DNA from: Heptranchias perlo
Lineage: Eukaryota
Assembly (NCBI RefSeq): GCF_035084215.1
Contig: NC_090349.1
Span: 9,176,001 to 9,240,000 of the forward strand
Length of the DNA: 64,000 nucleotides
Reading direction: 5' to 3'
Shown here piece by piece: positions 18,499 to 63,700 of the stretch (within the stretch, counting starts at the first letter, position 1; each line of letters begins with the position of its first letter). A program made the position numbers and the translations under genes. The notes below the pieces were generated by a model that saw only the letters and a list, made by a program, of their open reading frames with translations, did no database searches and had not been told where the DNA came from.

Positions 18499-18827
18499 TC
18501 ACTGGCAGGCTGATCTCTCGATGCTTTGCTTGAGTTGAGACCCGAGAGACTCATGTGTAACCCCGCAGGTGTACACTTGGTGTGAGTTCCAGTCGGTGGC
18601 GGACAGGGTCAGATAACTGCTCAGACTGTACGTCTGATCGGTGTCCCGTACGGCCTGAGTCGTCTGGACACCAGTGTCCGTGATCTTGCCGTCTACGCTC
18701 CACGATACTTCCACCGAACCCGGGAAAAAATTATTCACCAAACACACCAGGGTCGCCGCCTTTGCAGCAGAGATCTGATCGGACGCCGGCGGGAGGAGGG
18801 ATACCGAAGGGCTGGATGTCTCTCGAT
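18499..18827 (-). CDS. IGLC: Ig light-chain constant exon (lambda-type), cluster A
   Basis: C1-set domain PSVSLLPP..ATLVCLV..F.PG...V.W..YSLSSYLTL...W.SH.VYTC.VTH..ERSACQ with penultimate interchain Cys; acceptor ttcattgtag, phase 1. Confidence 0.95.
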
Positions 18828-20980: not shown

Positions 20981-22682
20981 CATAGAAGCATAGATTCTTA
21001 CAGCACAGAAGGAGGCCATTCTCTAGTAGTTTCCCCACCACTGACGCTAGACTGATTGGCCTGTAGTTACTAGGTTTATCCCTCTCACCTTTTTTGAATA
21101 GGGATATAACATTTGCAATCCTCCAGTCCTCTGGCACCACTCCCATATCCAAGGAGGATTGAAAGATTGTGATCAGAGCTTCTGCTATCTACACCTTTGC
21201 TTCCCCCAGCAACCAAGGATGCATCCCATCTGGCCAGGGGACTTGTTAACTTTGAGTGATGCCAACCTGTTCAGAACCTCCTTTCTATCTATTGTTATCC
21301 TTTCCAATTTCTCTATTCCCTCTTCCTCTGCTGCGACAATAACTTCACCCTCTGCTTTTGTGAAGACAGATGCAAAATATTCATTCAGTACCTCTGTCAT
21401 GCCCTGTGCCTCCTTCAAGAATATTTCTTTTTTTGTTCCTAATCGGCCCCACCATTCCTTTGACTATCCTTTTACTTTTTACGTTTATAAAGATTTTTAT
21501 GTTACCCGCTAATCTTTTCTCATACTCTCTCTTTGCCTTTCTCATATCCTTTTTTCAATTACCCCCTGCGTTCTCTGTATTCTAAATGTTTTTCTATTGT
21601 ATTCTGTACCTGACATTTGTCAAAAACCTCCCTTTTCTGTTTTATTTTAACCTATATTGCCTTTGTCATCCAGGAAGCTCTAACTTTGGATGTCCCATAT
21701 TTCCTCCTTATGGGAAAATGCTTGGTTTGCAGCCGAAGTATCTCCACCTTGAAAGCCTGCCAATACTCATTTACACTTTTCCTAGCCAATCTTTATTTCA
21801 TTTGTTTCTAGATCTCTCCTCAAATTACTGAAATTGGATCTCTTCCAGCTGGATATTTTCAACTTTGATATTTCTTTGTCCCTTTCAATAACTACTTCAA
21901 AACGAATTACATTATGATCAATATTACCCAGATGTTCTCCCACTGAAAAACACTCCACTTTTCCTATTTCTTTCTCCAGTACTAGATCCAGCATTGCTTC
22001 CTTCCTCGTTGGGCTAGAAACATACTGATTAAGAACGTTCTCCTGTTCACATTTTAGGAATTCTTCACCCTCCTTGCCCTTTACACTGTTTTCCCCTGGT
22101 CTATATTAGGGTAATTGAACTCCCCTGCTATTAGTATTACGGCTCTATTATTTTTACATTTTTCTGAAATTTGCCTACAGATTTGCTCCTTTATCGCCTG
22201 CTCATTATTTGGGGGTTTATAGTAAACACCCAGCAACATAGAAGTTCCTTTTCTGTTCCTTAACTCTAACCAAATAGATTCAGTCTTTGAACCCTCTAGT
22301 ACATCATCCCTCTGCAGCACTGTAATGTTATCCTTGATCAATACTGCCACCTGCTCCTTCACCGCCCCCCCCTCCCCCCCCTCCCCCCCCCCCCCCCCCC
22401 GCTCTTGCCCATGTTTCAGCCAGGTCTGCATTATGGCCACTATATCACAACCCCTTTTGGTTACTTGTGCCTGCAGCTCATCAACCTTATTTGTAACACT
22501 CCTCGCATTAACACACATGCATTCGGATATCATGCTGTCCGACTTTGCTTTTTCCCTCCATCTAATTCCTGTTCTTTCTACACTGTTCTTTACTCTGTTG
22601 CTGTTTGCCCCTCCTAGTTTTCTATGCACCTAGTCTCTCCTCTCTGCTGCTACGTCCTGGTTCCCCTTCTCCTGCCAAATTA
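20981..22682 (-). mobile_element. Internally deleted CR1 LINE in the cluster A J-C intron
   Basis: Endonuclease (NARS..K.DEL, ESIWLEL) and NYRPISL fragments; GTTTT on both sides; absent at the paralogous site near 40830. Confidence 0.85.
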
Positions 22683-22821
22683 GTTTTATATCCCTAATAA
22701 ACGAATTTAAACATTCGTTATAACCTACAGCATCAAGTGTCTTACCTGCCTCATAATATTATATTAATAATCAAAACGAGAATATCCATTGTACAGAATG
22801 AATCAAGTAAAAGTTACTTAC

Positions 22822-22860
22822 TCAGAACAGTCAGCTTGGTGCCTCCACCGAAGTAAAGCA
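22822..22860 (-). CDS. IGLJ: Ig light-chain J segment (LYFGGGTKLTVL), unrearranged, cluster A
   Basis: FGXG motif, GTAAGT donor at 22821, directly abutting a perfect heptamer. Confidence 0.95.
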
Positions 22861-22888
22861 CACAGTGCTACAGACCCATTCAAAAAGA
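22861..22888 (+). promoter_or_regulatory. 12-bp-spacer recombination signal sequence of J
   Basis: CACAGTG (22861-22867) + 12 nt ctacagacccat + TCAAAAAGA (6/9 match to ACAAAAACC). Confidence 0.88.
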
Positions 22889-22980
22889 TCCTGCAACAGA
22901 AACTCGCAGAGTTAATTTATGACATTGAAACAAGCAAGTATCCTACTGGGCATAACTCTTTTATATGGTATTAGGGTATA

Positions 22981-23600
22981 TGCCATCATTGCAAGGGGAT
23001 TGGAGTACAAGAGTAAGGAAGTCTTGCTGCAATTATATGGGCTCTGGTGAGATCTCACCTGGAGTACTGTGTACAGTTTTGGTCTCCATACCTAAGTAAG
23101 GATACACTTGCCTTAGAGGGGGTTCAACGAAGGTTCACTAGATTGATTCTTGAGAAGGGAAGATTGTCCTTTGAGGATAGATTGAATAAAATGGACCTAT
23201 GTTCTCTGGAGTTTAGAAAAATGAGAGGTGATCTCATTGAAACGTATAAAATTCTTACAGGGCTTGACAGGGGAGATGCTGAGAGGTTGTTTCCTCTGGC
23301 TGAAGAGTTTAGAATTAGGAGTCATAGTCTCAAAGTAAGTGGTCGGCCATTTAGGACCGAGATGAGGATAAATTTATTCACTCAGGCGGTTGTGAACCTT
23401 TGGAATTCTCTACCCCAGAGGGCTGTGACTATATTCAAGATTGAGATCGATAGACTTTTGGACACTAAGGGAATCAAGGGATATGGGGATAGGGCGGGAA
23501 AGTGGAGTTGAGGTCGAAGATCAGCCATGATCTTATTGAATGGCAGAGCACCTCGAGGGGCCATATGGCCTACTCCCGCATTTATTTCTTATGTTCTTAT
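22981..23600 (+). mobile_element. CR1 LINE 3' fragment inside the V-J intervening sequence
   Basis: ORF 23047-23511 HLEYCVQFWSP..RGDLIETYKI..VVNLWNSLP plus a CR1 tail. Confidence 0.9.
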
Positions 23601-23802
23601 ATAGTTCTGAAACGTGCTGAATACGAAGCTTGCTCAGTAATCTCCGAAAGCGTTAAATGGCAATATAATGCCTCACAGACAACATACCAAAAATTTCAGC
23701 AAATCCGGGTAAACAGTTTATGTCGACAACAGGATGGTAACTTTGGAAAATGGGGCGTTTCTTTAGTTGTCCCAGGAAAATCAGGAGTGGGGAGTGGGCG
23801 AC

Positions 23803-24174
23803 CAGTCCTGTGCAGGGTTTTTGTATCAGTCCTGTGCAGGGTTTATGTATCAGTCCTGTGCAGGGTTTTTGCATCAGTCCTGTACAGGGTTTATGTATCA
23901 GTCCTGTGCAGGGTTTATGTATCAGTCCTGTGCAGGGTTTTTGCATCAGTCCTGTACAGGGTTTATGTATCAGTCCTGTGCAGGGTTTATGTATCAGTCC
24001 TGTGCAGGGTTTATGTATCAGTCCTGTGCAGGGTTTATGTATCAGTCCTGTGCAGGGTTTATGTATCAGTCCTGTGCAGGGTTTATGTATCAGTCCTGTA
24101 CAGGGTTTATGTATCAGTCCTGTGCAGGGTTTATGTATCAGTCCTGTACACGGTTTTTGTATCAGTCCTGTGCA
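23803..24174. repeat. 24-bp tandem repeat (~15.5 units) built on the V-RSS spacer and nonamer
   Basis: Unit cagtcctgtgcagggtttatgtat; nonamer-type words every 24 nt from 23816 to 24152. Confidence 0.95.
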
Positions 24175-24190
24175 ATTTTCCTCCATCGTG
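24152..24190 (-). promoter_or_regulatory. 23-bp-spacer recombination signal sequence of V
   Basis: CACGATG (24190-24184) + exactly 23 nt + perfect ACAAAAACC (24160-24152), directly after YYCGWWKSSA. Confidence 0.92.
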
Positions 24191-24504
24191 CGCAGAGCTT
24201 TTCCACCAACCACAGTAATAGTCGGCGTCGTCCTCCGGTTGAACGCCGCTGATGGTTAAATATGCGGCGTTGGTTGCCGACTGACTCCTTCCAGAGAATC
24301 GATCAGGAATTCCGGTACCCCTGCTATCACGGTTAAGATCATGGTAGAGTAGAAATATAGGAGCATTCCCGGGTTTCTGCTGGTACCATCCTATGTCAGA
24401 GTTGCCCAAGGTATCACCAGACACGCTGCAACTTATTTTAACCGTTCCTTCCGGGGTGATAGATAACGATTGCGGTTGAGTTAATGTAATCTCCGCGTTT
24501 GAAC
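24191..24504 (-). CDS. IGLV: Ig light-chain V exon, unrearranged, cluster A
   Basis: Open frame SNAEITLTQPQSLSITPEGTVKISCSVSG..WYQQKPGNAP..GIPDRFSG..YLTISGVQPEDDADYYC; acceptor ttttatag. Confidence 0.95.
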
Positions 24505-24626
24505 CTATAAAAAGATCGAGAAATATTAGAGGGTGAGCTTCAAATCATCAATAACGTCACTTTATATCTCTATACAACAAAACATTGTTCACAATGAATC
24601 CAGTCAAACGTTTCCTGAATACTTAC

Positions 24627-24675
24627 AGACTGCGCAAAGTATCAGCGTTGTGATGACACGGACCCACCCCGACAT
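24627..24675 (-). CDS. IGLV: Leader exon of cluster A (MSGWVRVITTLILCAV)
   Basis: 49-nt hydrophobic exon, GTAAGT donor, phase 1, in frame with the V exon. Confidence 0.9.
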
Positions 24676-24794
24676 TATGAATTGAGTTTGTCTCAGCAAC
24701 CTCGCCAGTTTGCAGGGAGAAGGTGTTGTCTACCAGGCTCCCCTGGTCTTATCAATGGTATGAATGAGGGCGGGTTACCACGTTGTCCTTAATT

Positions 24795-24802
24795 ATGCAA
24801 AT
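24795..24802 (-). promoter_or_regulatory. Ig light-chain promoter octamer ATTTGCAT (cluster A)
   Basis: Perfect octamer 120 nt upstream of the ATG in light-chain orientation; GATAAG TATA-like word near 24750. Confidence 0.9.
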
Positions 24803-25669
24803 GAACGCTGACGTTACAAATCCCAGTTGAGCACCTATGATCGTGTTCAGGCCTTTACGCCACAAGACTTCCAAACTGCAGATGGCGATATTGGATAACA
24901 GGACCGATCTATATTGTGATGTTGTGCATCACAATCAAGATTTGTTAATGTTAAGTACAGGGACGTGCTGAAATTGCTGATTGTGTAAACTATGTAAGTC
25001 ATAATTTTTGACAAAACTCAGTAGGGTATATATTTTTGATCTTTCCTTCTACACAGGCCACATGTAAGCATTAGGAAGCAAAATTAATCAGTATTTGCGC
25101 CTTCTCTAAAGACACTTGTCCTAAATGTGCAACAGATAACAACAATCTTCATACACTTAGAAATCAATCCGCAAAAATTCAGCTACATTGCTACAAACTA
25201 TAGCTTGATGATATTTTATCTTTCCAATTAAATAACTTTTTATGAAGAATTTAAAGATGTTAGCCCATTATGGTTTATTTGAACCGTTTCTGCCTGGTAC
25301 ATTTACGCGAAGAAGTGTCAGTAATGCTCTTCGCTGAAAATAAAACGATGCTTATTGCCATAAGATGATATGAATCGATTCCCTACAAATTAGGAAACGA
25401 TTACTTGACCGTAAACCGATTGTTGGCACAAGGATCACATCCTAACGAGGATGTAATTAATTGTATCAGGCGGCTCTTGTTGACCTTTGAGCGATAGGGA
25501 CGTATTTTGATGAACCAATAAGGGTGACACTGGGTTGCACCAGGGTCACCAGACAAGAATGAGCGCTACTTTTAGGGCACCACTAATAAAAGAAGAAATC
25601 AAATTAAAAGAACCACAGCACAAGCAAAACAACCCCAACAAAAGCAAAGGTAACCTTACCAACTAAATC

Positions 25670-32854: not shown

Positions 32855-33160
32855 GTTCTGCACTATAGGTCTCAGCCCTTCACCTAGTTCTGCACTATGG
32901 GTCTCAGCCCTTTCCCTAGTTCTACACTATGTGTCTCAGCCCTTTACCAAGTTCTGCGCTAAGGGTCACAGCTCTTTACCTGGTTCTGCATTATGTGTCT
33001 CAGCCCTTTACCTAGTTCTACACTACGGATCTCAGTCCTTTACCTAACTCTGCATTAGGCGTCTCAGCCCTTCCCCTGGTTCTGTATTATGTTTCTCAGC
33101 TCTTTAGTTCTGCACTATGCATCTCAGCCGTTTACCTAGTTCTGCATTATGGGTCTGCAT
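32855..33160. repeat. Degenerate 32-bp minisatellite (~9 units) upstream of pseudogene B
   Basis: Unit agttctgcactatgggtctcagccctttacct; paralog of 50258-51199. Confidence 0.85.
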
Positions 33161-35120: not shown

Positions 35121-35634
35121 ATGTCTGAGTGAGTCCCTGATGCCGTAGTACTGATATTTTTTATGTCGGGTAAATATGGTACGCAAGTTTGATTGCGGGT
35201 TGGGATCGCTGTGAATAACGATTTATTGCACAGTATTAGCTAGTGACTGAAGTGTGTGAAGCTCACATCTCTTCTTTTCATAGGATCAATCGCGCAGATT
35301 ACATTAAGCCAACCAGTATCTGTCCACTGCCCCAGGACGAAACGTCGAAATAAGTTGTACAGTGACCGGAATCAGCTTGGCAAAGCTGCTGTATTCTGGT
35401 ACCAAAAATCTGCGAATGTTCTTCAGTATATTCTGTACCATAATGCCCACACTGTAAGCAGAAGCTCAGGTATTCCAGATCGATTCTCCGGAAGATGTAG
35501 CTCGTCAACCAACGCTGGATATGTAACCATCAGTCAGGTATAATCGGAAGTTGAGGCGAACTAATACTGCTCTGCGTGGATTGGCTCCATTGATCCGTAC
35601 AACTTTGGAACAAGGACCAAGCTGACTTTTCCGA
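35121..35634 (+). pseudogene. IGLV: Germline-joined Ig light-chain L-VJ pseudogene B (paralog of D), no C exon
   Basis: Leader 35121-35169 with TGA at codon 4; VJ exon 35284-35634 with frameshifts and TAA stops; junction YCSAWIGSIDPYNFGTRTKLTF; no RSS. Confidence 0.92.
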
Positions 35635-36934
35635 GTAAGTACATTTTCTTCGTGCTGTTAGAGATGGGTTTGTTATTTATAATTACACTCCTCAAATCAA
35701 TAAGGTCCTAAACATTAATAATCAGGTGTCACAGATTTATTAAGTATACAGTCAATGTATAATAGTACTTAAACCTACACGTCTGCAACCGAACCTGATC
35801 ATTTAGTTGAGGGACTCAAACGTGTTGGAGTACTGAGCTTAGGCCATTATGAATCGAAATACTCATTAGAAACAGCCAATTTTTATACATTTCTCTTACT
35901 CCCCTCACGTGACAATCCACATAATTCTGCAATACATAATTATATAAAAGTTAAAATGCAACTCCATCTAATGAGAATTTAATTGAATTATCTCTTGTCA
36001 ATAACTTTAGTTTTCCAAACGGGTACAACTCTGCTACTGCGTTATCTTATCGATAGTTACATTCTTGTTAGATATAACTGCTATTCCATCAAGTGACACT
36101 TTTAATTATAATTCTGTCTTTGATTCAGTACCATTCCATATCAATCAATCTCCTCCTTCTACATAAATTCCAATTAAAAAGGATGACGTAAACCTAGATG
36201 TTTTCTTTTGCAGAACTAAATGTTTTTCCTGCACTTATTATCAACATTAAAGTTCTCGGAAATATATGAATCTGTATGCAATGGCAAGTCTTTTAATTAG
36301 GTTTACTGAAGTGACTAAACTGACCACTGCTACAGTCAGTTTTGAATCGATACTTTAAATTGACATAAACGTCCCTGCTTAACAGGCAAAGGTTAAAGAT
36401 TAATATTACTACAACATAAAGAGAAATCAACAGTAGTATAATATTAGTTGACTTCAGTCAGTCTGATCAACCCTTTCCTTAAAGTCCAATCTGTTCCTGT
36501 ACTCATGGCAAAGGCTTGTTTCACTTATGGTTTATATACAGACAGAGTTGTGTATGCCTGACCTACAAATTCATTCTGATTTCTTCAATTGTAATAATGG
36601 GGAAAGATCTTTCCAAAAGTCAAAGTATAAAATTAGTCCACGGCCAATAAAAAACTGCAGATTATCCTTTTCTGACCTTCCCTTGTCAGTATTATACAAA
36701 GGGACAAAATATCAAAAGCTTATTTTAAACTAGGAGAAATACCACTCCTATTTTACTGATTAATTTCCCTCTTGTGGACCTTTCTCCATTGGATTGCAAT
36801 GATTCGAATGATGTTGTTTGAGTCCAAAAGGACACAGCATCAATTAGTCTGTTTATATCGTTAGTACATATTTTACCCCTAGAGTCAGAGCTGCTCTTTT
36901 TAAGACGGATTAGATAACTAAATCCTGCGGTGTA

Positions 36935-47778: not shown

Positions 47779-50257
47779 GTAAATCAAAGACTGGCAACTT
47801 GGTGATTGAACCTAATGCTACCTTCATAACTAAATCAGAACATTTCTAGAGGTGTTTGCAAGTGCCTTCAGCCAAAGCTGCAGAGTGGATGATCCTACTT
47901 AGCCACCCCCTGAGAACCCCGCCACCATACATATCATTGTCCATTTAAATCGATTCACTCCATGTGAGATTAAGAAGTGGCAAAGACTATAGGCCCTGAT
48001 AACATCATAATTGCAATGCTGAAAACCTATGCACCAGAGCTAGCTGTCCCCCTAGTCAAGCTCTTCCAGTATAAATAATGAGATTTTGCAAGATGGCCGA
48101 GTTAAGTGCTGTCCAGAACAAACACAGAATAAATCTAACGCAACCAATTTACTGTCCTGTTAGCTGCCTCCCAATCATCAATAAAGTTTTGGAAGGAGCC
48201 ATTAATAGTTCCATCAAGGAACGCCTATTCAACAATTGCTGGCTCAAAATGCTCAGTTTAGGTTCCAACTGAACCATTCAGCTCTAGACTGCATCACTGC
48301 ATTGATGCAGCGACAGCTGAATGCAAGAGAAGATGTGAAAATCGCTGTCCTTGACACGAAGATAGTATTTTACTAAGCATAGCACCAAAGAGCCCTAGCA
48401 AAACCTAAGTGAAGGGCGTCAAAGGAAAACTACTCCAGTGGCTGGAGTCACACCTGACGCCAAGGAAGGTGATTGTGATTCTTGGAGTCCAGCCATCATA
48501 GTCACAGGACATCATTGCAGGTCTTCCTCAGGAAAGCATCTTCAGCCCCCCATCTTCAGCTGCTTCATCTATGGCCTTCCCTCTGTCATAAGGTCAGGAA
48601 TGAGACTGTTCGCTGCTGATTCTTTAGTGTTCATCTCCATCGGAATTCCGATAATGATGGAGCCCACATTAGCCTACATCAGGATCTGGATAACATCCAG
48701 GCTTGGGCTGACACGGCAGGTAACATTTGCAGGATAGAAAACAACTAATACCCATTACAGGCATTATACCAGTTGCTTGCCCCGGGGATTGGTGCTGGGA
48801 CCATAAGAACATAAGAAATGGGAGCAGGAGAAGGCCATACGGCCCTCGATATTTGTAAGCCATACGGCCGCTCGAGCCTGCTCCGCCACTCAATAAAACT
48901 ACTACTGCTTCTAGTTTACATCAATGACATGGTCTCAGAAACGCAGTGCAAGTTGGTACAATTTGAACATGATCAATGGAATTGGAAGAGGCAGCTCTTA
49001 AAGTACAGAATGAACTGTGTTAGTTTTAGACGTCTGAGTGAGGAGGAAAACTGGGGTAGCTTGGCCTTTTCAGCCTTCAAAGTAGACATCTGATAGGTGA
49101 TTTTATAGCGATATTTAAGATAGTGAACTATCTGGAAATGATAAAGCTGGAAAATTACTTTAAATTAAATTGAAAGTAGGATAATAGGCCACAGATTCAA
49201 CAAGATGTATTTACACATCGACTTTAACGTGAAAAAGCCACAAGGCGAATCCCAGAGGCATAATACAAATATTGAACACCAAGTCAAAGAAGTAGGTTTT
49301 AGGAGGTGTGACCAAACGTTTGGTCAAAGAGGTAGGTTTTCAGGAAAGGCTTAAAGGAGGAGTGGGAGATGGAGACGTGGAAGGGGTTAGGGAGAGAATT
49401 CAAAAGCGCAGGGCTTAGGCGTCTGAAGGCACGACTGCCAATTGTAGGAGGAGGGTACAAGATAGGGAGTGGCAAGGCCATGAAGGTATATAAATTACCT
49501 GGAGAAGCTATTATTACAGCTTGCAATGCTAAGTCAATTACGCAGCATTTGCTGGACAATAGATAGTCCAATTTGGGATATTTCTATTTGATGCGTCAAG
49601 TAATAGACGCTAACAGATGTGGACTAATTGGGGGTAATGTTGACTTTGTGCGATAGTGCAAAATGTGTGATAGCGAATCGGCAGCCTGTTTTACATTTCT
49701 CTCCATTTTTATTTCCATTGACTTCACACCTAGCCTGCTCCACTCTCTACAGCACTTGAATGTTGTGGTATGCCATTCAGTCCTTGCACAAGCACATGAC
49801 TAGAACAGCCTATAAACCACACTGACTTCTGCTAATTCCACACCAGTAGGCGCATCTCCCTGCGTAACACTGTCATTTGAGATAAGTGTTTCTTCCTGTT
49901 AAATTCTATGGAAGCCGATTGTTAGATGTCCAGTAATATTTGCTTTAAGTGTAGAGTATTCAATCCACACCCTCAACCTCGTCATCAAAGCAGTGCGTTG
50001 GAATAGTAACCTAGTAGGACTTATGCAAAATACCGTAAATTCCTTATTCATTTCTAAAGGACCATGTAATTTCAAGTACAAACCAAAATAAATCTCTAGT
50101 TTATATTGGCTCCTTTTAGGCATATGCGCAGTGTAGAATGTCATCAGACATTTAACTGGAGAACGCAATCCACAACTGCTCTAAGAGTGGATCAAATCCC
50201 CTTCCGCAACAAGTCGCAAATCAATTGTGCTTTAAGTTCCTCCGTCATAATTGACCG

Positions 50258-51199
50258 AATTCTCCACTATGGGTCTCAGCCCTTCACCTAATTCTCCACT
50301 AATGGGTCTCAGCCCTTCACCTAATTCTCCACTAATGGGTCTCAGCCCTTCACCTAATTCGCCACTATGGGTCTCAGCCCTTCACCTAATTCGCCACTAT
50401 GGGTCTCAGCCCTTCACCTAATTCTCCACTAATGGGTCTCAGCCCTTCACCTAATTCGCCACTATGGGTCTCAGCCCTTCACCTAATTCTCCACTAATGG
50501 GTCTCAGCCCTTCACCTAATTCGCCACTATGGGTCTCAGCCCTTCACCTAATTCGCCACTATGGGTCTCAGCCCTTCACCTAATTCTCCACTAATGGGTC
50601 TCAGCCCTTCACCTAATTCGCCACTATGGGTCTCAGCCCTTCACCTAATTCTCCACTAATGGGTCTCAGCCCTTCACCTAATTCGCCACTATGGGTCTCA
50701 GCCCTTCACCTAATTCGCCACTATGGGTCTCAGCCCTTCACCTAATTCGCCACTATGGGTCTCAGCCCTTCACCTAATTCGCCACTATGGGTCTCAGCCC
50801 TTCACCTAATTCTCCACTATGGGTCTCAGCCCTTCACCTAATTCTCCACTAATGGGTCTCAGCCCTTCACCTAATTCTCCACTAATGGGTCTCAGCCCTT
50901 CACCTAATTCTCCACTATGGGTCTCAGCCCTTCACCTAATTCTCCACTATGGGTCTCAGCCCTTCACCTAATTCTCCACTAATGGGTCTCAGCCCTTCAC
51001 CTAATTCTCCACTAATGGGTCTCAGCCCTTCACCTAATTCTCCACTAATGGGTCTCAGCCCTTCACCTAATTCTCCACTAATGGGTCTCAGCCCTTCACC
51101 TAATTCTCCACTAATGGGTCTCAGCCCTTCACCTAATTCTCCACTATGGGTCTCAGCCCTTCACCTAATTCGCCACGATGGGTCTCAGCCCTTCACCTA
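50258..51199. repeat. Homogeneous 32/33-bp minisatellite (~29 units) upstream of gene D
   Basis: Unit aattc(t/g)ccacta(a)tgggtctcagcccttcacct, head-to-tail with no spacers. Confidence 0.95.
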
Positions 51200-51725: not shown

Positions 51726-51774
51726 ATGTCTGAGTGGCTTGTTGTTGTCACCGTGCTGATACTTTTTATGTCAG
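51726..51774 (+). CDS. IGLV: Leader exon of gene D (MSEWLVVVTVLILFMS)
   Basis: 49-nt hydrophobic exon, GTAAAT donor, phase 1. Confidence 0.9.
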
Positions 51775-51878
51775 GTAAATATTCGAACATTTGATTGCAG
51801 GTTGGAATCGCTGTGAATAACGATTTATTGCGCAGTATTAGATAGTGTCTGAAGCTCATACATCTATTCTTTTCACAG

Positions 51879-52235
51879 GCTCAAACGCTGAGGTTACATT
51901 AAGCCAACCACAGTCTCTTTCCACTGCTCTGGGAGGAAACGTCGAAATAAGTTGTACAGTCACCGGAGTCAGCTTGGGAAACGCAGCTGTATCCTGGTAC
52001 CAGCAAAAATCTGGGAATGTTCCTCGGTATATTCTGTACCATAATGCCCAAACTGTAAGCAGAGGCTCCGGCACTCCAGATCGATTCTCCGGAAGAAGTA
52101 GCTCGTCAACCAACGCTGGATATTTAACCATCAGTCAGGTGCAATCGGAGGATGAGGCGAACTATTACTGCGGTGTATGGATTAGCTCCATCAATGCTTT
52201 TGCCTTCGGGACAGGCACCAAGCTGACTTGTCTGA
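51879..52235 (+). CDS. IGLV: Germline-joined VJ exon of Ig light chain D, in frame
   Basis: EVTLSQPQSLS..ISC..WYQQKSG..PDRFSG..EDEANYYCGVWISSINAFAFGTGTKLTCL, GTAAGT donor, no RSS; L+VJ+C = 49+357+329 = 735 nt (244 aa). Confidence 0.95.
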
Positions 52236-53661
52236 GTAAGTAACTTTACTTCGTGCTGTTAGACGAGATGTTATTTTTAATTTACTCCTCAAATGAATAA
52301 GGTTCCAAACATTGAAAATCAGGTGTCTCAGATTTATGAAGTATATAGCACATGTATAAGAGTACTTAAACATACACACAAAAGGCAATACTTACAACTA
52401 AACCTTGCTAGTTTAGTTGAGGGATTCAGACGTGTTAGAGTTCTGAGCTCAGTATCTGACGTCTTATGAATCGAAGTACTCATTACAAACAGACAATTTT
52501 TATACATTTCGCTTACTCCATCCACGTGACAATCCATACAATTCCGTATTACATAATAGTTATAATACAACTTATCAACTTAATTGACTTGTCAATAACT
52601 TCAGTTTTCCTTACACAAGCTATTTTTTCGTAGACTGGTACAACTCCGCTATTTCATTATCTTATTGATACTTCGCTCTTGTTGCATAGAATTGCTATTC
52701 CACCAAATTAAACTTTTAATTATAAGTCTCTCTTTGATTCAGTACCATTTCGCAGCAGGTAATCTCCTCCTTCTGCATAAATCCCAATTAAAAAGTATGA
52801 CTTATACCCAGATGTTTTCTTTTGCAGAACTAACTGTTTCTCCTGCACTTATCAACTGATAAAGTTCTCTGAAATATATGAATCTGTATGCAATGGCAAG
52901 TCTTTTAATTAGGTTTACTGAAGTGACTAATTAACCACTGCTGCAAGGTCAGTCCTGAATCAATAGCCCATTGGTGCTCTCAATTGACTTAAACTTCCCT
53001 GCTGAAAAGGCAATGGCTAAGGGTTATAATTACTACAATATGAAGAGAAATCAATAGTAGTATAACATTAGTAGACTTCAGGACAATCTGATTAACCCTT
53101 TTCTTAAGTGCAATATGTTCCTGTACTCGTGGCAAAGGGTTGTTTCACTTACGGTTTATAAACAATTGTGTACGCCCGATCTACAAATTCATTTTGATTT
53201 ATTCAATTGTAATAATGGGAGGAAGGTCTTTCCAAAAGTCAAAATATAAAATTATTCCACGGCCTATGTTTCAACGGTCATTACCCTTTTCTGTCCTTCC
53301 GTTGTTGGTATTGTTAAAAAAAAAAGGCAAAACATCCAAGCTTATTTAAGCCAGGAGAATTACCATACCCTTTCATTGATTAATTTCCCTCTTCTCTTAA
53401 TTTCCCCATTGGATTGTAACGATTTAATTGTTGCTATTGGAGTCAAAAAGGACACAGCATCAATTAGGCTGTTTATATCGTTAGTCCATATTTTACCCCT
53501 ATAGTCAGAGTTGCTGTTTTTAAGAGGGTACAGATAATTCAATCCTGCGGTGTAATATACACTTAACAGGATTGAATTTGCATTTATATAACGCCTTTTA
53601 CAACCTCAGAACGTTCTGTAGTGTTTCATAATCAATTAATTACTTTTGAAGTATAATCACT

Positions 53662-60386: not shown

Positions 60387-60715
60387 CCCGAGAGACGTCC
60401 AGCCCTTCGGTATCCCTCCTCCCGCCGGCGTCCGATCAGATCTCTGCTGCAAAGGCGGCGACCCTGGTGTGTTTGGTGAATAATTTTTTCCCGGGTTCGG
60501 TGGAAGTATCGTGGAGCGTAGACGGCAAGATCACGGACACTGGTGTCCAGACGACTCAGGCCGTACGGGACACCGATCAGACGTACAGTCTGAGCAGTTA
60601 TCTGACCCTGTCCGCCACCGACTGGAACTCACACCAAGTGTACACCTGCGGGGTTACACATGAGTCTCTCGGGTCTCAACTCAAGCAAAGTATCGAGAGA
60701 TCAGCCTGCCAGTGA
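60387..60715 (+). CDS. IGLC: Ig light-chain constant exon (lambda-type), gene D
   Basis: Acceptor tttccctttccag; same protein as the cluster A C exon apart from the split first codon. Confidence 0.95.
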
Positions 60716-63700
60716 AAGAGAAAACCCGCCGTATTCGGTATAAAGTCTGTTATCGAACATGGAGCAGGGACTGTTAAAACGATTTCATTTTTTCCTTTGC
60801 TTGTAATCTTATATCCGATTTCTTAACTGTATCAGGAATGGATCCTGTATTATCGATTTAAAATATCGTTTATTACAATCATATTTCATTCGCAGAGGTG
60901 GTGAATCTGTCAGTGTCTTTTTTATCCAAAAAGTGGACAGTAATTTCTCTGAAACCAATGCCAGTGAATATTTTAGTTAAGCACTACTCATTTTTTGACA
61001 TCAATTGGAAAAAGATAGCCATCACCCAGAACTTAAATTATTATTTAATTCAACCCAGAATCATTTTCCAGACCTACGTTTCAAATTAATTTATGAATTG
61101 TAAACATATAGGAGACATATATAACAGATATTCTTCGGTTTACATTAGTTAGGATAGAAATTCCGCGGGGTTCTCCCGATCTCACGCCTCAACTTTGACG
61201 GAAGATCGATGGAAACCGCAGTGAAACGGCTGCTTTGACGCCGCTTCTCCGAAGTTTCACCGATCTTCCATCGGAGAGCCCCCCCACCACCCCCGAAATT
61301 CCAAGCGGTTAATTACAAAATCCGCTCCATAACTAAACCAAATAAAGTGCGGAGGTGACTTCATGTTGATGCGGCTACATTTCACTAGTAATTTCACCTA
61401 ACCATCTACAGAAGAAATTAGCGTTGAGGTTATCAATAATTCCGCCAATGTCAGACATTCATTCCTGTATCACCTTACCCCCAATATCTCAGCTCTTTTC
61501 AAACTCTCTAGTTATCTGTCACTGGTAGCCCGGAGCTCTTCCAATGCCTTCTTTCGTTTTTTACTCTATTACCCATTTCTTTCTTTACGTTTTCACTTTA
61601 AATACACCCGGCTCATTGAGTAGCTTATGTTGCTTTATGGTGCTACATGTATCAAGAGTGAACTGTTTCTAAGGCATCGATATTTAGAACAATTTGAAAC
61701 CCATTTTCCGTGTTATATACTCGTCAGTAGTTGGGATATTCCATTCATCCCTGCAATGTTCAAACAGCTATATTAAAAATATATATCTTGAGAGTTTTTA
61801 AAGAAACAGAGAGGCTGTGTGTGTGTGTGCGCGCATATGTTTATATATGTGTGTGTGTGTGTGACCAGGCGAGGACAGGAATGTTGCAGAGCTGCTGACT
61901 GCACTAGGCCGCTGAAACAAGTAGAACCAAGCAAGGGCAGTCCTGTGGATGTGGACCATGGAGGAGAGATGGTGATGAAGGATTAAATGGTTGAACATGT
62001 GACGCACGGGGAGAGGTCCAGAAGAATAAGGGATAATGCCTCACAGTCGCGTCACAAGGATTTCATCGGTGACTTTGACCAGAAATTCCGCGGGGTTCTC
62101 CCGATCTCACGCCTCAAGCAAGACCATAGGGTTAAAACAGAGAATTATGGGCGATACTGATTGCAGAAAAAAAAAAGATATAAAAGGGTTACTGTATCCA
62201 GTCCTTTAAAATAGTCCCTTTAAACCCCGTTATGTAATTCACTAATATAAATAGATAATTGGAGAAACTGCACACTTGCATCTGGAAGTTCCTTCGGTAT
62301 GAATAGATTTTAAACCGATCTCTTTTAGTCTGACTCCTGAGGTAAATTGTGTAATAAGAAACAGCGACTCTAAAAATGTTCCTTTCACCTCTCCCGAGCA
62401 ACGAAACATCTCAGCAAAATAAGAACGAGAAAGCCATTTTGTTTCTTTACCCATTTCTGTTACTGTTTTAAGGCTTTCAGTGATTTACCAACTGTACCCG
62501 GGCGTGGATCTTTGTCCCTATGATCCAGAGGTTGTAACTCCTCTATACCTTCTCCTCGAAATGTGGTGAAGAGTTCACAACTACCTCACTTGCATTAATT
62601 AATATGAAGTAAAAATCAGCAGATACTAAAAGTACAACAAATATACCTTGTAAATTCAATAAGAAAGCGCCAAATGGGTCATTTAGCCTTAGAAAGAACC
62701 CCTCTGATTCAACCGAAGAGTCTCTGGGAATTGAACAAGATATTCTTATTGCTCAGGAAAACTCGAGGGGTAGAATTTCTGCGGTGAGTGCTCACTATCG
62801 TCCGCCTTAGCTTCGGCGGAAGATCGCGCAAACCCCAGGGAAATGACCGTTTAGACCGTTTCTGTAGGGTTTCCATAGAATTTACGGCGGGAGATCGGCG
62901 AATCCCCCGGAAATTCTATACCCTTAAGTTGTTCCGAAGTTCTCGCTTTTAACCTCTTATGTGGGAATACAACAAATATAGATGTATGCACGAAAAAGGA
63001 GGATACACGTGGGCGTGTCAAAAATAGTGCAAGTACGGTTAGATAATAAGGATTTTCACGAATAAGGACTTTATGCACAGATGAGATATTTATCTTTACC
63101 GCAGTTCAATCCACAGATTCTCCCCCTCCCTTGGCAAATACTTAAACTGCAAAAAAAACTTACTGGATACAATGGGGGTTAAATTGGTTAACCCCAGAAA
63201 CTGGGCGCGATCCGCTATTAATCCGCACCTGGTGCAGGCAGGACAAAGCATTAGTCCTGCCTGAACACTTACCTCAGCCAAGCGTTAAAAACCTGCCTTG
63301 ACACAAGGATTAAAGGACATCCGAACTCTCCACCAGCAGGGGGAGCTCGAATCTTTAAAGGCGGGCTGTCTCTCACACAGATTTCCCCCCTCCCCTGATA
63401 AATATATAAACCAGAAAAAAATAACTTACTAGATACATTAACTGCAAACTGGGAATGTTCATTAGTCAGTGGAAAGGGAGCTGAACGGTAGGAAGCCAGT
63501 GGCAGCATCAGAGAATGGAGAGATCTCGGCTCAAACCCAGCAAAGATAATACAGCTTAAAAAACAATCTTAGCAAAAGTCTAACGGACTTCCCTCAGCCA
63601 AGCCAATGTTTAGTCTTCCTGTTAAGATTAACTTTCTGCCGGGGTTCTCCCGATCGTGCGCCGAAACTTCAGCGTAAGAACGCCGGAAACCCCGGACAAA

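What the first reader, a model, noticed from the sequence alone, without database searches (positions are those of the whole stretch)
23803..24190. The V-RSS nonamer is amplified into a 15-copy tandem array
Seen: the 24-bp unit contains the distal spacer and nonamer of the 23-RSS itself. Nonamers recur at exact 24-nt intervals from 24152 to 23816: two perfect ACAAAAACC (first and last), eleven ACATAAACC and two GCAAAAACC. The extra copies have no heptamer at 12 or 23 nt, so they are nonamer-only sites. The real heptamer (CACGATG) and the J nonamer are non-consensus. Established: the RAG1 nonamer-binding domain anchors on the nonamer. Inference: the array could be a RAG loading platform that offsets weak signals, or a decoy that dampens recombination (perhaps explaining why this copy escaped germline joining). 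It is deleted on rearrangement, and VNTR alleles could tune usage. Neutral slippage is the null hypothesis.
Basis: partly seen in the sequence, partly recalled or inferred. Interest (0 to 1): 0.8.

Follow-up and report, generated by a model that had tools for sequence, protein, structure and literature searches.

The report
Minisatellite seeded on an antibody-gene signal
In a shark antibody light-chain gene, a 24-letter stretch that includes part of the DNA signal guiding gene assembly has been copied 15 times in a row; the gene still assembles normally, so the extra copies look like an ordinary young tandem repeat and not a new control device.

Summary
On the minus strand, a lambda-type V gene ends at 24191. 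It is followed by heptamer CACGATG, a 23-nt spacer and a perfect nonamer. A 24-bp unit (last 15 nt of the spacer plus the nonamer) is repeated head to tail over 24175-23801. That gives 15 nonamers: 2 perfect, 11 ACATAAACC and 2 GCAAAAACC. Only the first has a CAC heptamer at 12 or 23 (+-1) nt.

New evidence: RNA contigs from the same animal show leader-intron splicing, J-to-C splicing and more than 200 different V-J joints at exactly these signal borders, with added letters. So this 23-RSS works, and the array is removed on joining.

The premise of weak signals does not hold. CACGATG fits the preferred CACNRYR pattern, and nonamer 1 is consensus. The amplified variant (A4 to T) breaks the RWR motif linked to nonamer function.

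Nine of 15 units are identical and a multi-unit block is repeated, so the array looks young. It was not seen in contigs of two other species. Tandem repeats cover about 3% of the window.

The best reading is a neutral minisatellite seeded on a working RSS. A RAG platform or sink is not excluded, but nothing here supports it. Copy number could not be checked with long reads. The scan's first readers noted RSS-like minisatellites on other DNA of this genome; I did not check those notes.

The parts
24795..24802 (-). Ig octamer ATTTGCAT upstream of the V leader
   Evidence: read directly
24627..24675 (-). Leader exon of the lambda-type V gene (ATG at 24675-24673)
   Evidence: Sequence. The splice 24627/24504 is seen in RNA contigs (joints 24502-24503 to 24625-24627, cut +2).
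24191..24504 (-). V exon 2 (FR1 to YYCGWWKSSA), intact reading frame
   Evidence: The best protein matches in the length range searched are tetrapod V-lambda and VpreB-like V domains.
24184..24190 (-). 23-RSS heptamer CACGATG
   Evidence: V-J joints in RNA end at 24190-24195.
24161..24183 (-). 23-nt spacer; its distal 15 nt (24175-24161) are the first copy of the repeat's 15-mer
24152..24160 (-). Functional nonamer ACAAAAACC (number 1), the only one with a heptamer at 23 nt
23801..24175 (-). 24-bp minisatellite: 15 units of (15-mer + nonamer) plus a final partial 15-mer. It holds 15 nonamer-like sites at 24-nt spacing.
23601..23800 (-). Unique part of the V-J intervening sequence
   Evidence: One search finds no repeats here. 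Partly present in a contig of another species.
22982..23600 (+). Fragment of a dispersed retroelement-like repeat inserted in the V-J intervening sequence
   Evidence: At least 6 copies in the window at 76-85% identity. Summed contig word depth about 10^6 in the DNA-type runs. A contig of organism B appears to join about 22960 to about 23597 without it (inferred).
22861..22888 (-). J 12-RSS: nonamer TCTTTTTGA (22888-22880), 12-nt spacer, heptamer CACTGTG (22867-22861)
22822..22860 (-). J segment (LYFGGGTKLTVL), splice donor after 22822
   Evidence: RNA loose ends at 22822 continue into the C exon sequence.
18499..18827 (-). Constant-region exon of the same cluster
   Evidence: 97.5% identical to the C exon of the joined cluster at 60389-60753.

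Best explanation
The array is a young, locus-specific minisatellite. It arose by slippage or unequal exchange of a 24-bp segment that straddles the distal spacer and the nonamer of a working V-lambda 23-RSS. Only the first unit belongs to the signal: heptamer CACGATG, 23 nt, ACAAAAACC. The other 14 nonamer-like copies lie 47, 71 ... 359 nt from the heptamer, outside the 12/23 (+-1) rule. A RAG complex engaged at the heptamer therefore cannot use them. On V-J joining, the whole array leaves with the roughly 1.33 kb of intervening DNA. Because the array is in register, a change in copy number always leaves a nonamer 23 nt from the heptamer. An unequal exchange could, however, swap the perfect nonamer for the ACATAAACC variant. 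Shown here: the anatomy, the use of the RSS pair in vivo, and the excision. Inferred: the origin by slippage, and little or no effect on RAG.
For: Array structure and register. Signs of ordinary minisatellite dynamics: 9 of 15 units are identical, variants are linked (CTGT...GCAAAAACC occurs twice), and a 3-unit block (10-12) recurs as units 13-15 with one difference, in the last nonamer. The RSS works: RNA contigs from the same sample carry more than 200 distinct V-J joints (22854-22859 to 24190-24195) with 0-7 extra letters. They also show leader-intron splicing and J-to-C splicing. No such joints appear in the DNA run. The amplified variant is the poorer nonamer, YWR instead of RWR at positions 4-6 (PMC12711392). 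The heptamer fits CACNRYR (PMC9723617). The unit is not dispersed: summed contig word depth over the array is 60-520, against about 47-50 for the single-copy contigs beside it and about 10^6 for the neighbouring retroelement. No array words were found at 85% likeness or more in contigs of two other species that do hold V and, in one, J-flank sequence. Tandem repeats cover 3.0% of this window (2.4% without this array). With the many RSSs expected in a shark genome (own knowledge, not counted here), some should fall inside arrays by chance.
Against: No measurement of RAG binding or recombination rate against copy number exists, so a quantitative effect is not excluded. Four units keep an intact A5 tract. 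The absence in other species is weak evidence: their contigs also fail to cover the unique flank 23716-23802, and they differ by 8-12% from this locus. Copy number and length polymorphism were not tested. The literature searches found no precedent, so no prior case shows that such arrays are neutral.
Confidence: 0.72

Rival explanations
1. RAG loading platform. The 14 extra nonamer-like sites raise the local concentration of RAG1 through its nonamer-binding domain, or keep the region nucleosome-poor, and so raise use of this cluster.
For: The RAG1 nonamer-binding domain binds a nonamer by itself (structure 3GNA, cited in PMC12711392). A 'nonamer first' model and nucleosome repulsion by A-tracts are discussed there. 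The cluster is well represented among rearranged transcripts.
Against: The signals need no rescue (nonamer 1 is perfect). 11 of 15 copies carry A4 to T, which breaks RWR and shortens the A-tract to 3. There is no sign of conservation. Depth in contig data cannot rank usage.
Confidence: 0.08
2. Decoy or sink. The extra nonamers hold RAG1 in unproductive complexes, lowering recombination. This would have protected the cluster from germline joining.
For: Three of the four clusters in the window are germline-joined; only the one with the array is split.
Against: More than 200 distinct somatic V-J joints at these borders show efficient use. The units are far more alike than the split cluster and its joined twin, which differ by 14-16%. 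The present array is therefore younger than that history, unless it has been continuously homogenised. A first-reader note (s1-882577, not checked here) reports another split lambda cluster, and nothing is known of an array there.
Confidence: 0.05
3. Assembly artefact. The array exists, but its copy number, or even its expansion, is inflated by mis-assembly of a repeat.
For: Short-word contigs break at 23851 and 24152 and cannot span the array. No long read was inspected.
Against: Both borders are confirmed with 0-2 differences. Interior words are present in the DNA contigs and in RNA contigs of the same animal, at summed depths above the single-copy level. Interior variants form an ordered, non-random pattern.
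Confidence: 0.08
4. Cis-regulatory VNTR unrelated to RAG. For example, the A4 to T change creates ATAAAC, a forkhead-like core repeated 11 times that could bind a transcription factor near the V promoter or the J-C intron.
For: Motif resemblance only (own knowledge of the forkhead RYAAAYA core). RNA contigs lie on the array in the RNA run.
Against: The match is 6/7 and untested. There is no conservation. Transcription of the intervening DNA is expected anyway from sterile transcripts (PMC5192425).
Confidence: 0.04

Closest known systems
Canonical 23-RSS of V-lambda gene segments
   Same: A CAC-heptamer abuts the V coding end, followed by a 23-nt spacer and the consensus nonamer ACAAAAACC. It is paired with a 12-RSS on J and used for deletional V-J joining with junctional diversity.
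   Different: The distal spacer and the nonamer are the first unit of a 15-unit tandem array, so 14 further nonamer-like sites follow in register. My literature searches found no such case.
Minisatellite / VNTR in non-coding DNA
   Same: 24-bp unit, head-to-tail, 94% matches, runs of identical units, a duplicated multi-unit block and edge units that differ from the interior. Other minisatellites lie nearby in the same window.
   Different: The unit happens to contain a protein-recognition element of a working recombination signal. Length polymorphism was not tested.
Split (non-joined) shark light-chain clusters, e.g. nurse shark NS4/kappa with a V-J intervening sequence of about 500 bp (PMC2193156)
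   Same: [quoted passage not shown] The short V-J intervening DNA is excised by RAG. Joined and split copies coexist in one family.
   Different: This cluster is lambda-type (V-23 / J-12). A 2016 review describes that isotype as germline-joined in all species studied (PMC5192425). The intervening DNA is swollen to 1.33 kb by the array and a retroelement fragment.
Cryptic RSSs / nonamer-only RAG1 binding sites
   Same: Sequence elements resembling part of an RSS, without a partner heptamer at a legal distance.
   Different: Cryptic RSSs that matter in vivo usually have a CAC heptamer and often lack a recognisable nonamer (PMC2193808, PMC12711392). Here the reverse holds: nonamers without heptamers.

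Membership tests
Functional 23-RSS | Heptamer starting with CAC directly at the coding end | tested here: met
   CACGATG at 24190-24184 abuts the V end at 24191. It fits CACNRYR (PMC9723617).
Functional 23-RSS | Spacer of 23 +-1 nt followed by an A-rich nonamer | tested here: met
   23-nt spacer, then ACAAAAACC at 24160-24152
Functional 23-RSS | Partner 12-RSS in the facing orientation | tested here: met
   TCTTTTTGA-12-CACTGTG upstream of J
Functional 23-RSS | Used in vivo: coding joints at the heptamer border with trimming and added letters | tested here: met
   More than 200 distinct joints, 22854-22859 to 24190-24195, with 0-7 inserted letters in RNA contigs and none in DNA contigs. Caveat: a near-identical paralogue cannot be fully excluded.
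Functional RSS (each of the 14 extra nonamer copies) | CAC heptamer at 12 +-1 or 23 +-1 nt from the nonamer | tested here: not met
   None of nonamers 2-15 has CAC at spacers 11-13 or 22-24. The in-unit CACAGGA is 5 or 29 nt away.
Minisatellite / VNTR | Head-to-tail copies of a unit of about 10-100 bp with high identity | tested here: met
   24 bp x 15.5 copies, 94% matches, no indels
Minisatellite / VNTR | Copy number varies between alleles or individuals | not testable with these tools
   Only short-word contigs were available, and they break at the array.
Lambda-type IgL cluster of cartilaginous fish | V-23RSS / J-12RSS orientation, a lambda-like V and J, and V-J-C within a few kb | tested here: met
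   RSS orientation. J motif FGGGTKLTVL. Best V matches are tetrapod V-lambda and VpreB-like domains. C exon 4 kb downstream. No isotype phylogeny was done.
RAG-recruiting or RAG-titrating cis element (hypothetical, no described family) | RAG1 occupancy of the array, and an effect of unit number on recombination | not testable with these tools
   Needs EMSA or ChIP and recombination substrates. Indirect sequence evidence speaks against selection for binding.

The most novel reading that the evidence does not exclude
The in-register nonamer array acts as a copy-number-dependent modulator of RAG1 capture at this cluster, as a local reservoir or as a sink. VNTR alleles would then tune how often this rare split lambda gene is rearranged, somatically or in the germ line. 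More broadly, RSS-seeded minisatellites might be a recurrent feature of shark antigen-receptor loci; three unchecked first-reader notes in this genome point that way.
Probability: 0.08. Interest if true: 0.7.

Novelty: new member of a known kind. Interest (0 to 1): 0.3.

Why it matters
As found, it is a curiosity: an ordinary minisatellite that happens to have been seeded on the spacer and nonamer of a working recombination signal. It also offers a natural test substrate. It answers the question 'what do extra nonamers next to a real RSS do?', and the first answer is that they do not stop recombination. The by-product may matter more. RNA from the same animal shows that a split lambda-type light-chain cluster in a shark is rearranged with junctional diversity, whereas a 2016 review states that shark lambda genes are all germline-joined. 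If array length proved polymorphic and correlated with usage, it would be a new kind of cis-control of V(D)J recombination. Nothing here indicates that.

Tried and rejected
I did not repeat that step. The paralogous clusters were mapped instead by a DNA self-comparison using coordinates only.

2. The search for homologous proteins with the V exon returned only tetrapod V-lambda-like proteins of 98-176 aa. Shark light chains are annotated full-length and fall outside the length range. No orthologous shark locus could therefore be fetched to compare RSSs.

3. The PDB sequence search with the C exon was dominated by multi-domain heavy chains. It did not help to tell lambda from kappa.

4. Searches of the scan's notes for 'nonamer tandem array' found nothing checked.

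5. TE-borne satellite rejected. The retroelement copies all end at 23597-23600, 200 bp before the array, and the unit is not abundant in the genome.

6. Coding repeat rejected. Several frames are open through the array, but that follows mechanically from a stop-free 24-nt unit. The V frame stops in unit 2.

7. Cryptic RSSs inside the array rejected.

Full report
**What is there.** The window holds four lambda-type immunoglobulin light-chain clusters of the cartilaginous-fish kind.
- Cluster A lies on the minus strand: V at 24802-24191, J at 22860-22822, C exon at 18827-18499.
- Its decayed, germline-joined twin lies at about 41535-40981, also on the minus strand.
- A germline-joined cluster lies on the plus strand: VJ at 51727-52237, C at 60389-60753.
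- A germline-joined pseudogene lies at about 35123-35640 on the plus strand.

Only cluster A is split. Its V domain matches tetrapod V-lambda and VpreB-like domains best. Its signals have the lambda orientation, V-23 and J-12.

**Check of the observation.**
- TRF reports 23803-24174, period 24, 15.5 copies, 94% matches, no indels, score 667.
- On the minus strand, the V coding end (24191) is followed by CACGATG (24190-24184), a 23-nt spacer (24183-24161) and ACAAAAACC (24160-24152).
- Nonamer-like 9-mers then recur every 24 nt to 23824-23816. Numbers 1 and 15 are perfect, numbers 10 and 13 are GCAAAAACC, and eleven are ACATAAACC.
- The remaining 15 nt of the unit (CTGCACAGGACTGAT and close variants) occur 16 times in the window, only here. 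The first copy is the distal 15 nt of the spacer itself. The chance expectation is 0.15.
- Fifteen of the 30 nonamer-like sites (1 mismatch or fewer) of the whole window, and both perfect ones, are in the array.
- A scan of spacers 11-13 and 22-24 finds a CAC heptamer for nonamer 1 only.
- The unit's own CACAGGA lies 5 or 29 nt from nonamers, so it makes no legal signal.

**Does the signal work?** I laid contigs of four public runs on 22600-24900. Run X5 comes from the same sample as the DNA run X1. It is RNA, because it shows the leader-intron splice (24627/24504) and loose ends at 22822 that continue into the C exon (compare).
- X5 carries 13 listed V-J joints, with the tool reporting 208 further joints that it did not show.
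- The joints run from 22854-22859 (J trimmed by 1-6 nt) to 24190-24195 (V trimmed by 0-4 nt, or with one extra letter).
- Between the two sides lie 0-7 non-templated letters (for example C, CCC, CGCC, GGACC, AAAAATC).
- No such joint is seen in the DNA run.

This is the signature of somatic RAG-mediated V-J joining at exactly these two signals. It also shows that the 1.33 kb between them, array included, is excised. At positions that tell the paralogues in this window apart, nearly all RNA depth carries the cluster A letter. The joints therefore come from cluster A or from a near-identical copy. One exception (24404) is listed under things noticed.

The published high-throughput assays do not support this premise.
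- In Hoolehan et al. (PMC9723617), heptamer position 4 is the least discriminating. CACNRYR is preferred more than 100-fold over CACNYRY, and CACGATG appears among the top-ranked heptamers in most spacer contexts.
- CACGATG is CAC-G-RYR. Nonamer 1 is the consensus.
- The J heptamer is perfect. The J nonamer, read from the heptamer as TCAAAAAGA, keeps C2 and the A-tract.

**What the extra copies are like.** Phased as 15-mer plus nonamer, 9 of the 15 units are identical. The variants are linked (CTGT...GCAAAAACC occurs twice). A three-unit block (units 10-12) recurs as units 13-15, with one difference in the last nonamer. The first and last units differ from the interior. These are the usual marks of a young minisatellite growing by slippage or unequal exchange.

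The amplified nonamer, ACATAAACC, has T-A-A at positions 4-6. A 2025 in vivo screen found that a purine-A/T-purine motif at exactly these positions best supports nonamer function and binding by the nonamer-binding domain. It also found that the A-tract favours nucleosome repulsion (PMC12711392). So the expansion multiplied the predicted poorer ligand. Only 4 of 15 copies keep the motif and an A5 tract. Selection for RAG loading would be expected to do the opposite.

**Age and distribution.**
- The unit is not a dispersed repeat. Summed contig word depth over the array in the DNA run is 60-520, against about 47-50 for the single-copy contigs beside it. The retroelement fragment at 22982-23600 reaches about 10^6.
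- That fragment ends 200 bp before the array in all its copies, so the array is not a transposon tail.
- Contigs of two other species (organisms B and C) cover V at about 92% identity.
- In organism B, contigs also cover J, its RSS and 23597-23715, apparently without the retroelement.
- Nothing from either species lies on 23755-24139 at 85% likeness or more.
- This is only weak evidence for lineage specificity, because the unique flank 23716-23802 is not covered either.
- Cluster A and its germline-joined twin differ by 14-16% in V and flanks, while the array units are almost identical. In its present form the array is much younger than the split/joined divergence it was proposed to explain.

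**Null expectation.** Tandem repeats cover 3.0% of this window, or 2.4% without this array. A shark genome is expected to hold many RSSs (own knowledge, not counted here), so a few should fall inside arrays by chance. First readers of this scan noted three other RSS-like minisatellites on other pieces of this genome (s1-883185, s1-883286, s1-883071). I did not check these. They fit either chance or a more general tendency.

**Most likely mechanism.** The first unit supplies the nonamer of a working 23-RSS. The other 14 copies sit 47 to 359 nt from the heptamer, beyond the 12/23 (+-1) rule (PMC2193808), and are carried off on the excised DNA.

One consequence follows from the register. Changes in copy number never destroy the 23-nt spacing, but they could exchange the perfect nonamer for the weaker variant.

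I put the neutral minisatellite reading at about 0.72. The rivals are a RAG platform at 0.08, a decoy at 0.05, an error in copy number at 0.08 and another cis-regulatory role at 0.04.

**Limits.**
- All runs were available only as short-word contigs. The number of units, length polymorphism and relative usage could not be measured.
- No orthologous locus could be fetched.
- Literature searches found no earlier description of tandem nonamer arrays. The library is incomplete, so this is not proof of novelty.

Noticed in passing
window 22822-24802 (cluster A): RNA contigs from the same animal show that this split lambda-type cluster is somatically rearranged with diverse junctions and spliced to C. 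A 2016 review (PMC5192425) states that lambda (type II) genes are germline-joined in all cartilaginous fish studied. This bears on the scan's separate note s1-882561.
   Followed up: partly
window 24404: In the RNA run, about 64% of depth (58 contigs) reads T instead of G. On the coding strand this is GGC to GGA, a synonymous change in CDR1. In the DNA run the only contig with T is the joined pseudogene twin, whose other differences are absent from the RNA. The origin is unexplained: another individual, a near-identical unassembled copy, gene conversion, or dominant clones.
   Followed up: no
window 22982-23600: A fragment of a very abundant retroelement-like repeat sits inside the V-J intervening DNA (at least 6 copies in the window). 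A contig of another species appears to join about 22960 directly to about 23597, so the insertion looks lineage-specific.
   Followed up: partly
window 32855-33156 and 50254-51199: Two arrays of one 32-bp minisatellite family (9.6 and 29 copies). They lie about 2 kb and 0.5 kb upstream of the two plus-strand germline-joined V genes (35123 and 51727), so the array was probably duplicated with the cluster.
   Followed up: no
window 35123-35640 (+): A fourth lambda-type V, germline-joined to J. It has in-frame stop codons (TAA twice near the YYC motif) and a damaged leader, so it is a joined pseudogene.
   Followed up: partly
window 23755-24139: RNA contigs also lie on the array and on 22862-23017 upstream of J. 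This fits sterile transcripts of the unrearranged allele reading through the V-J intervening DNA.
   Followed up: no
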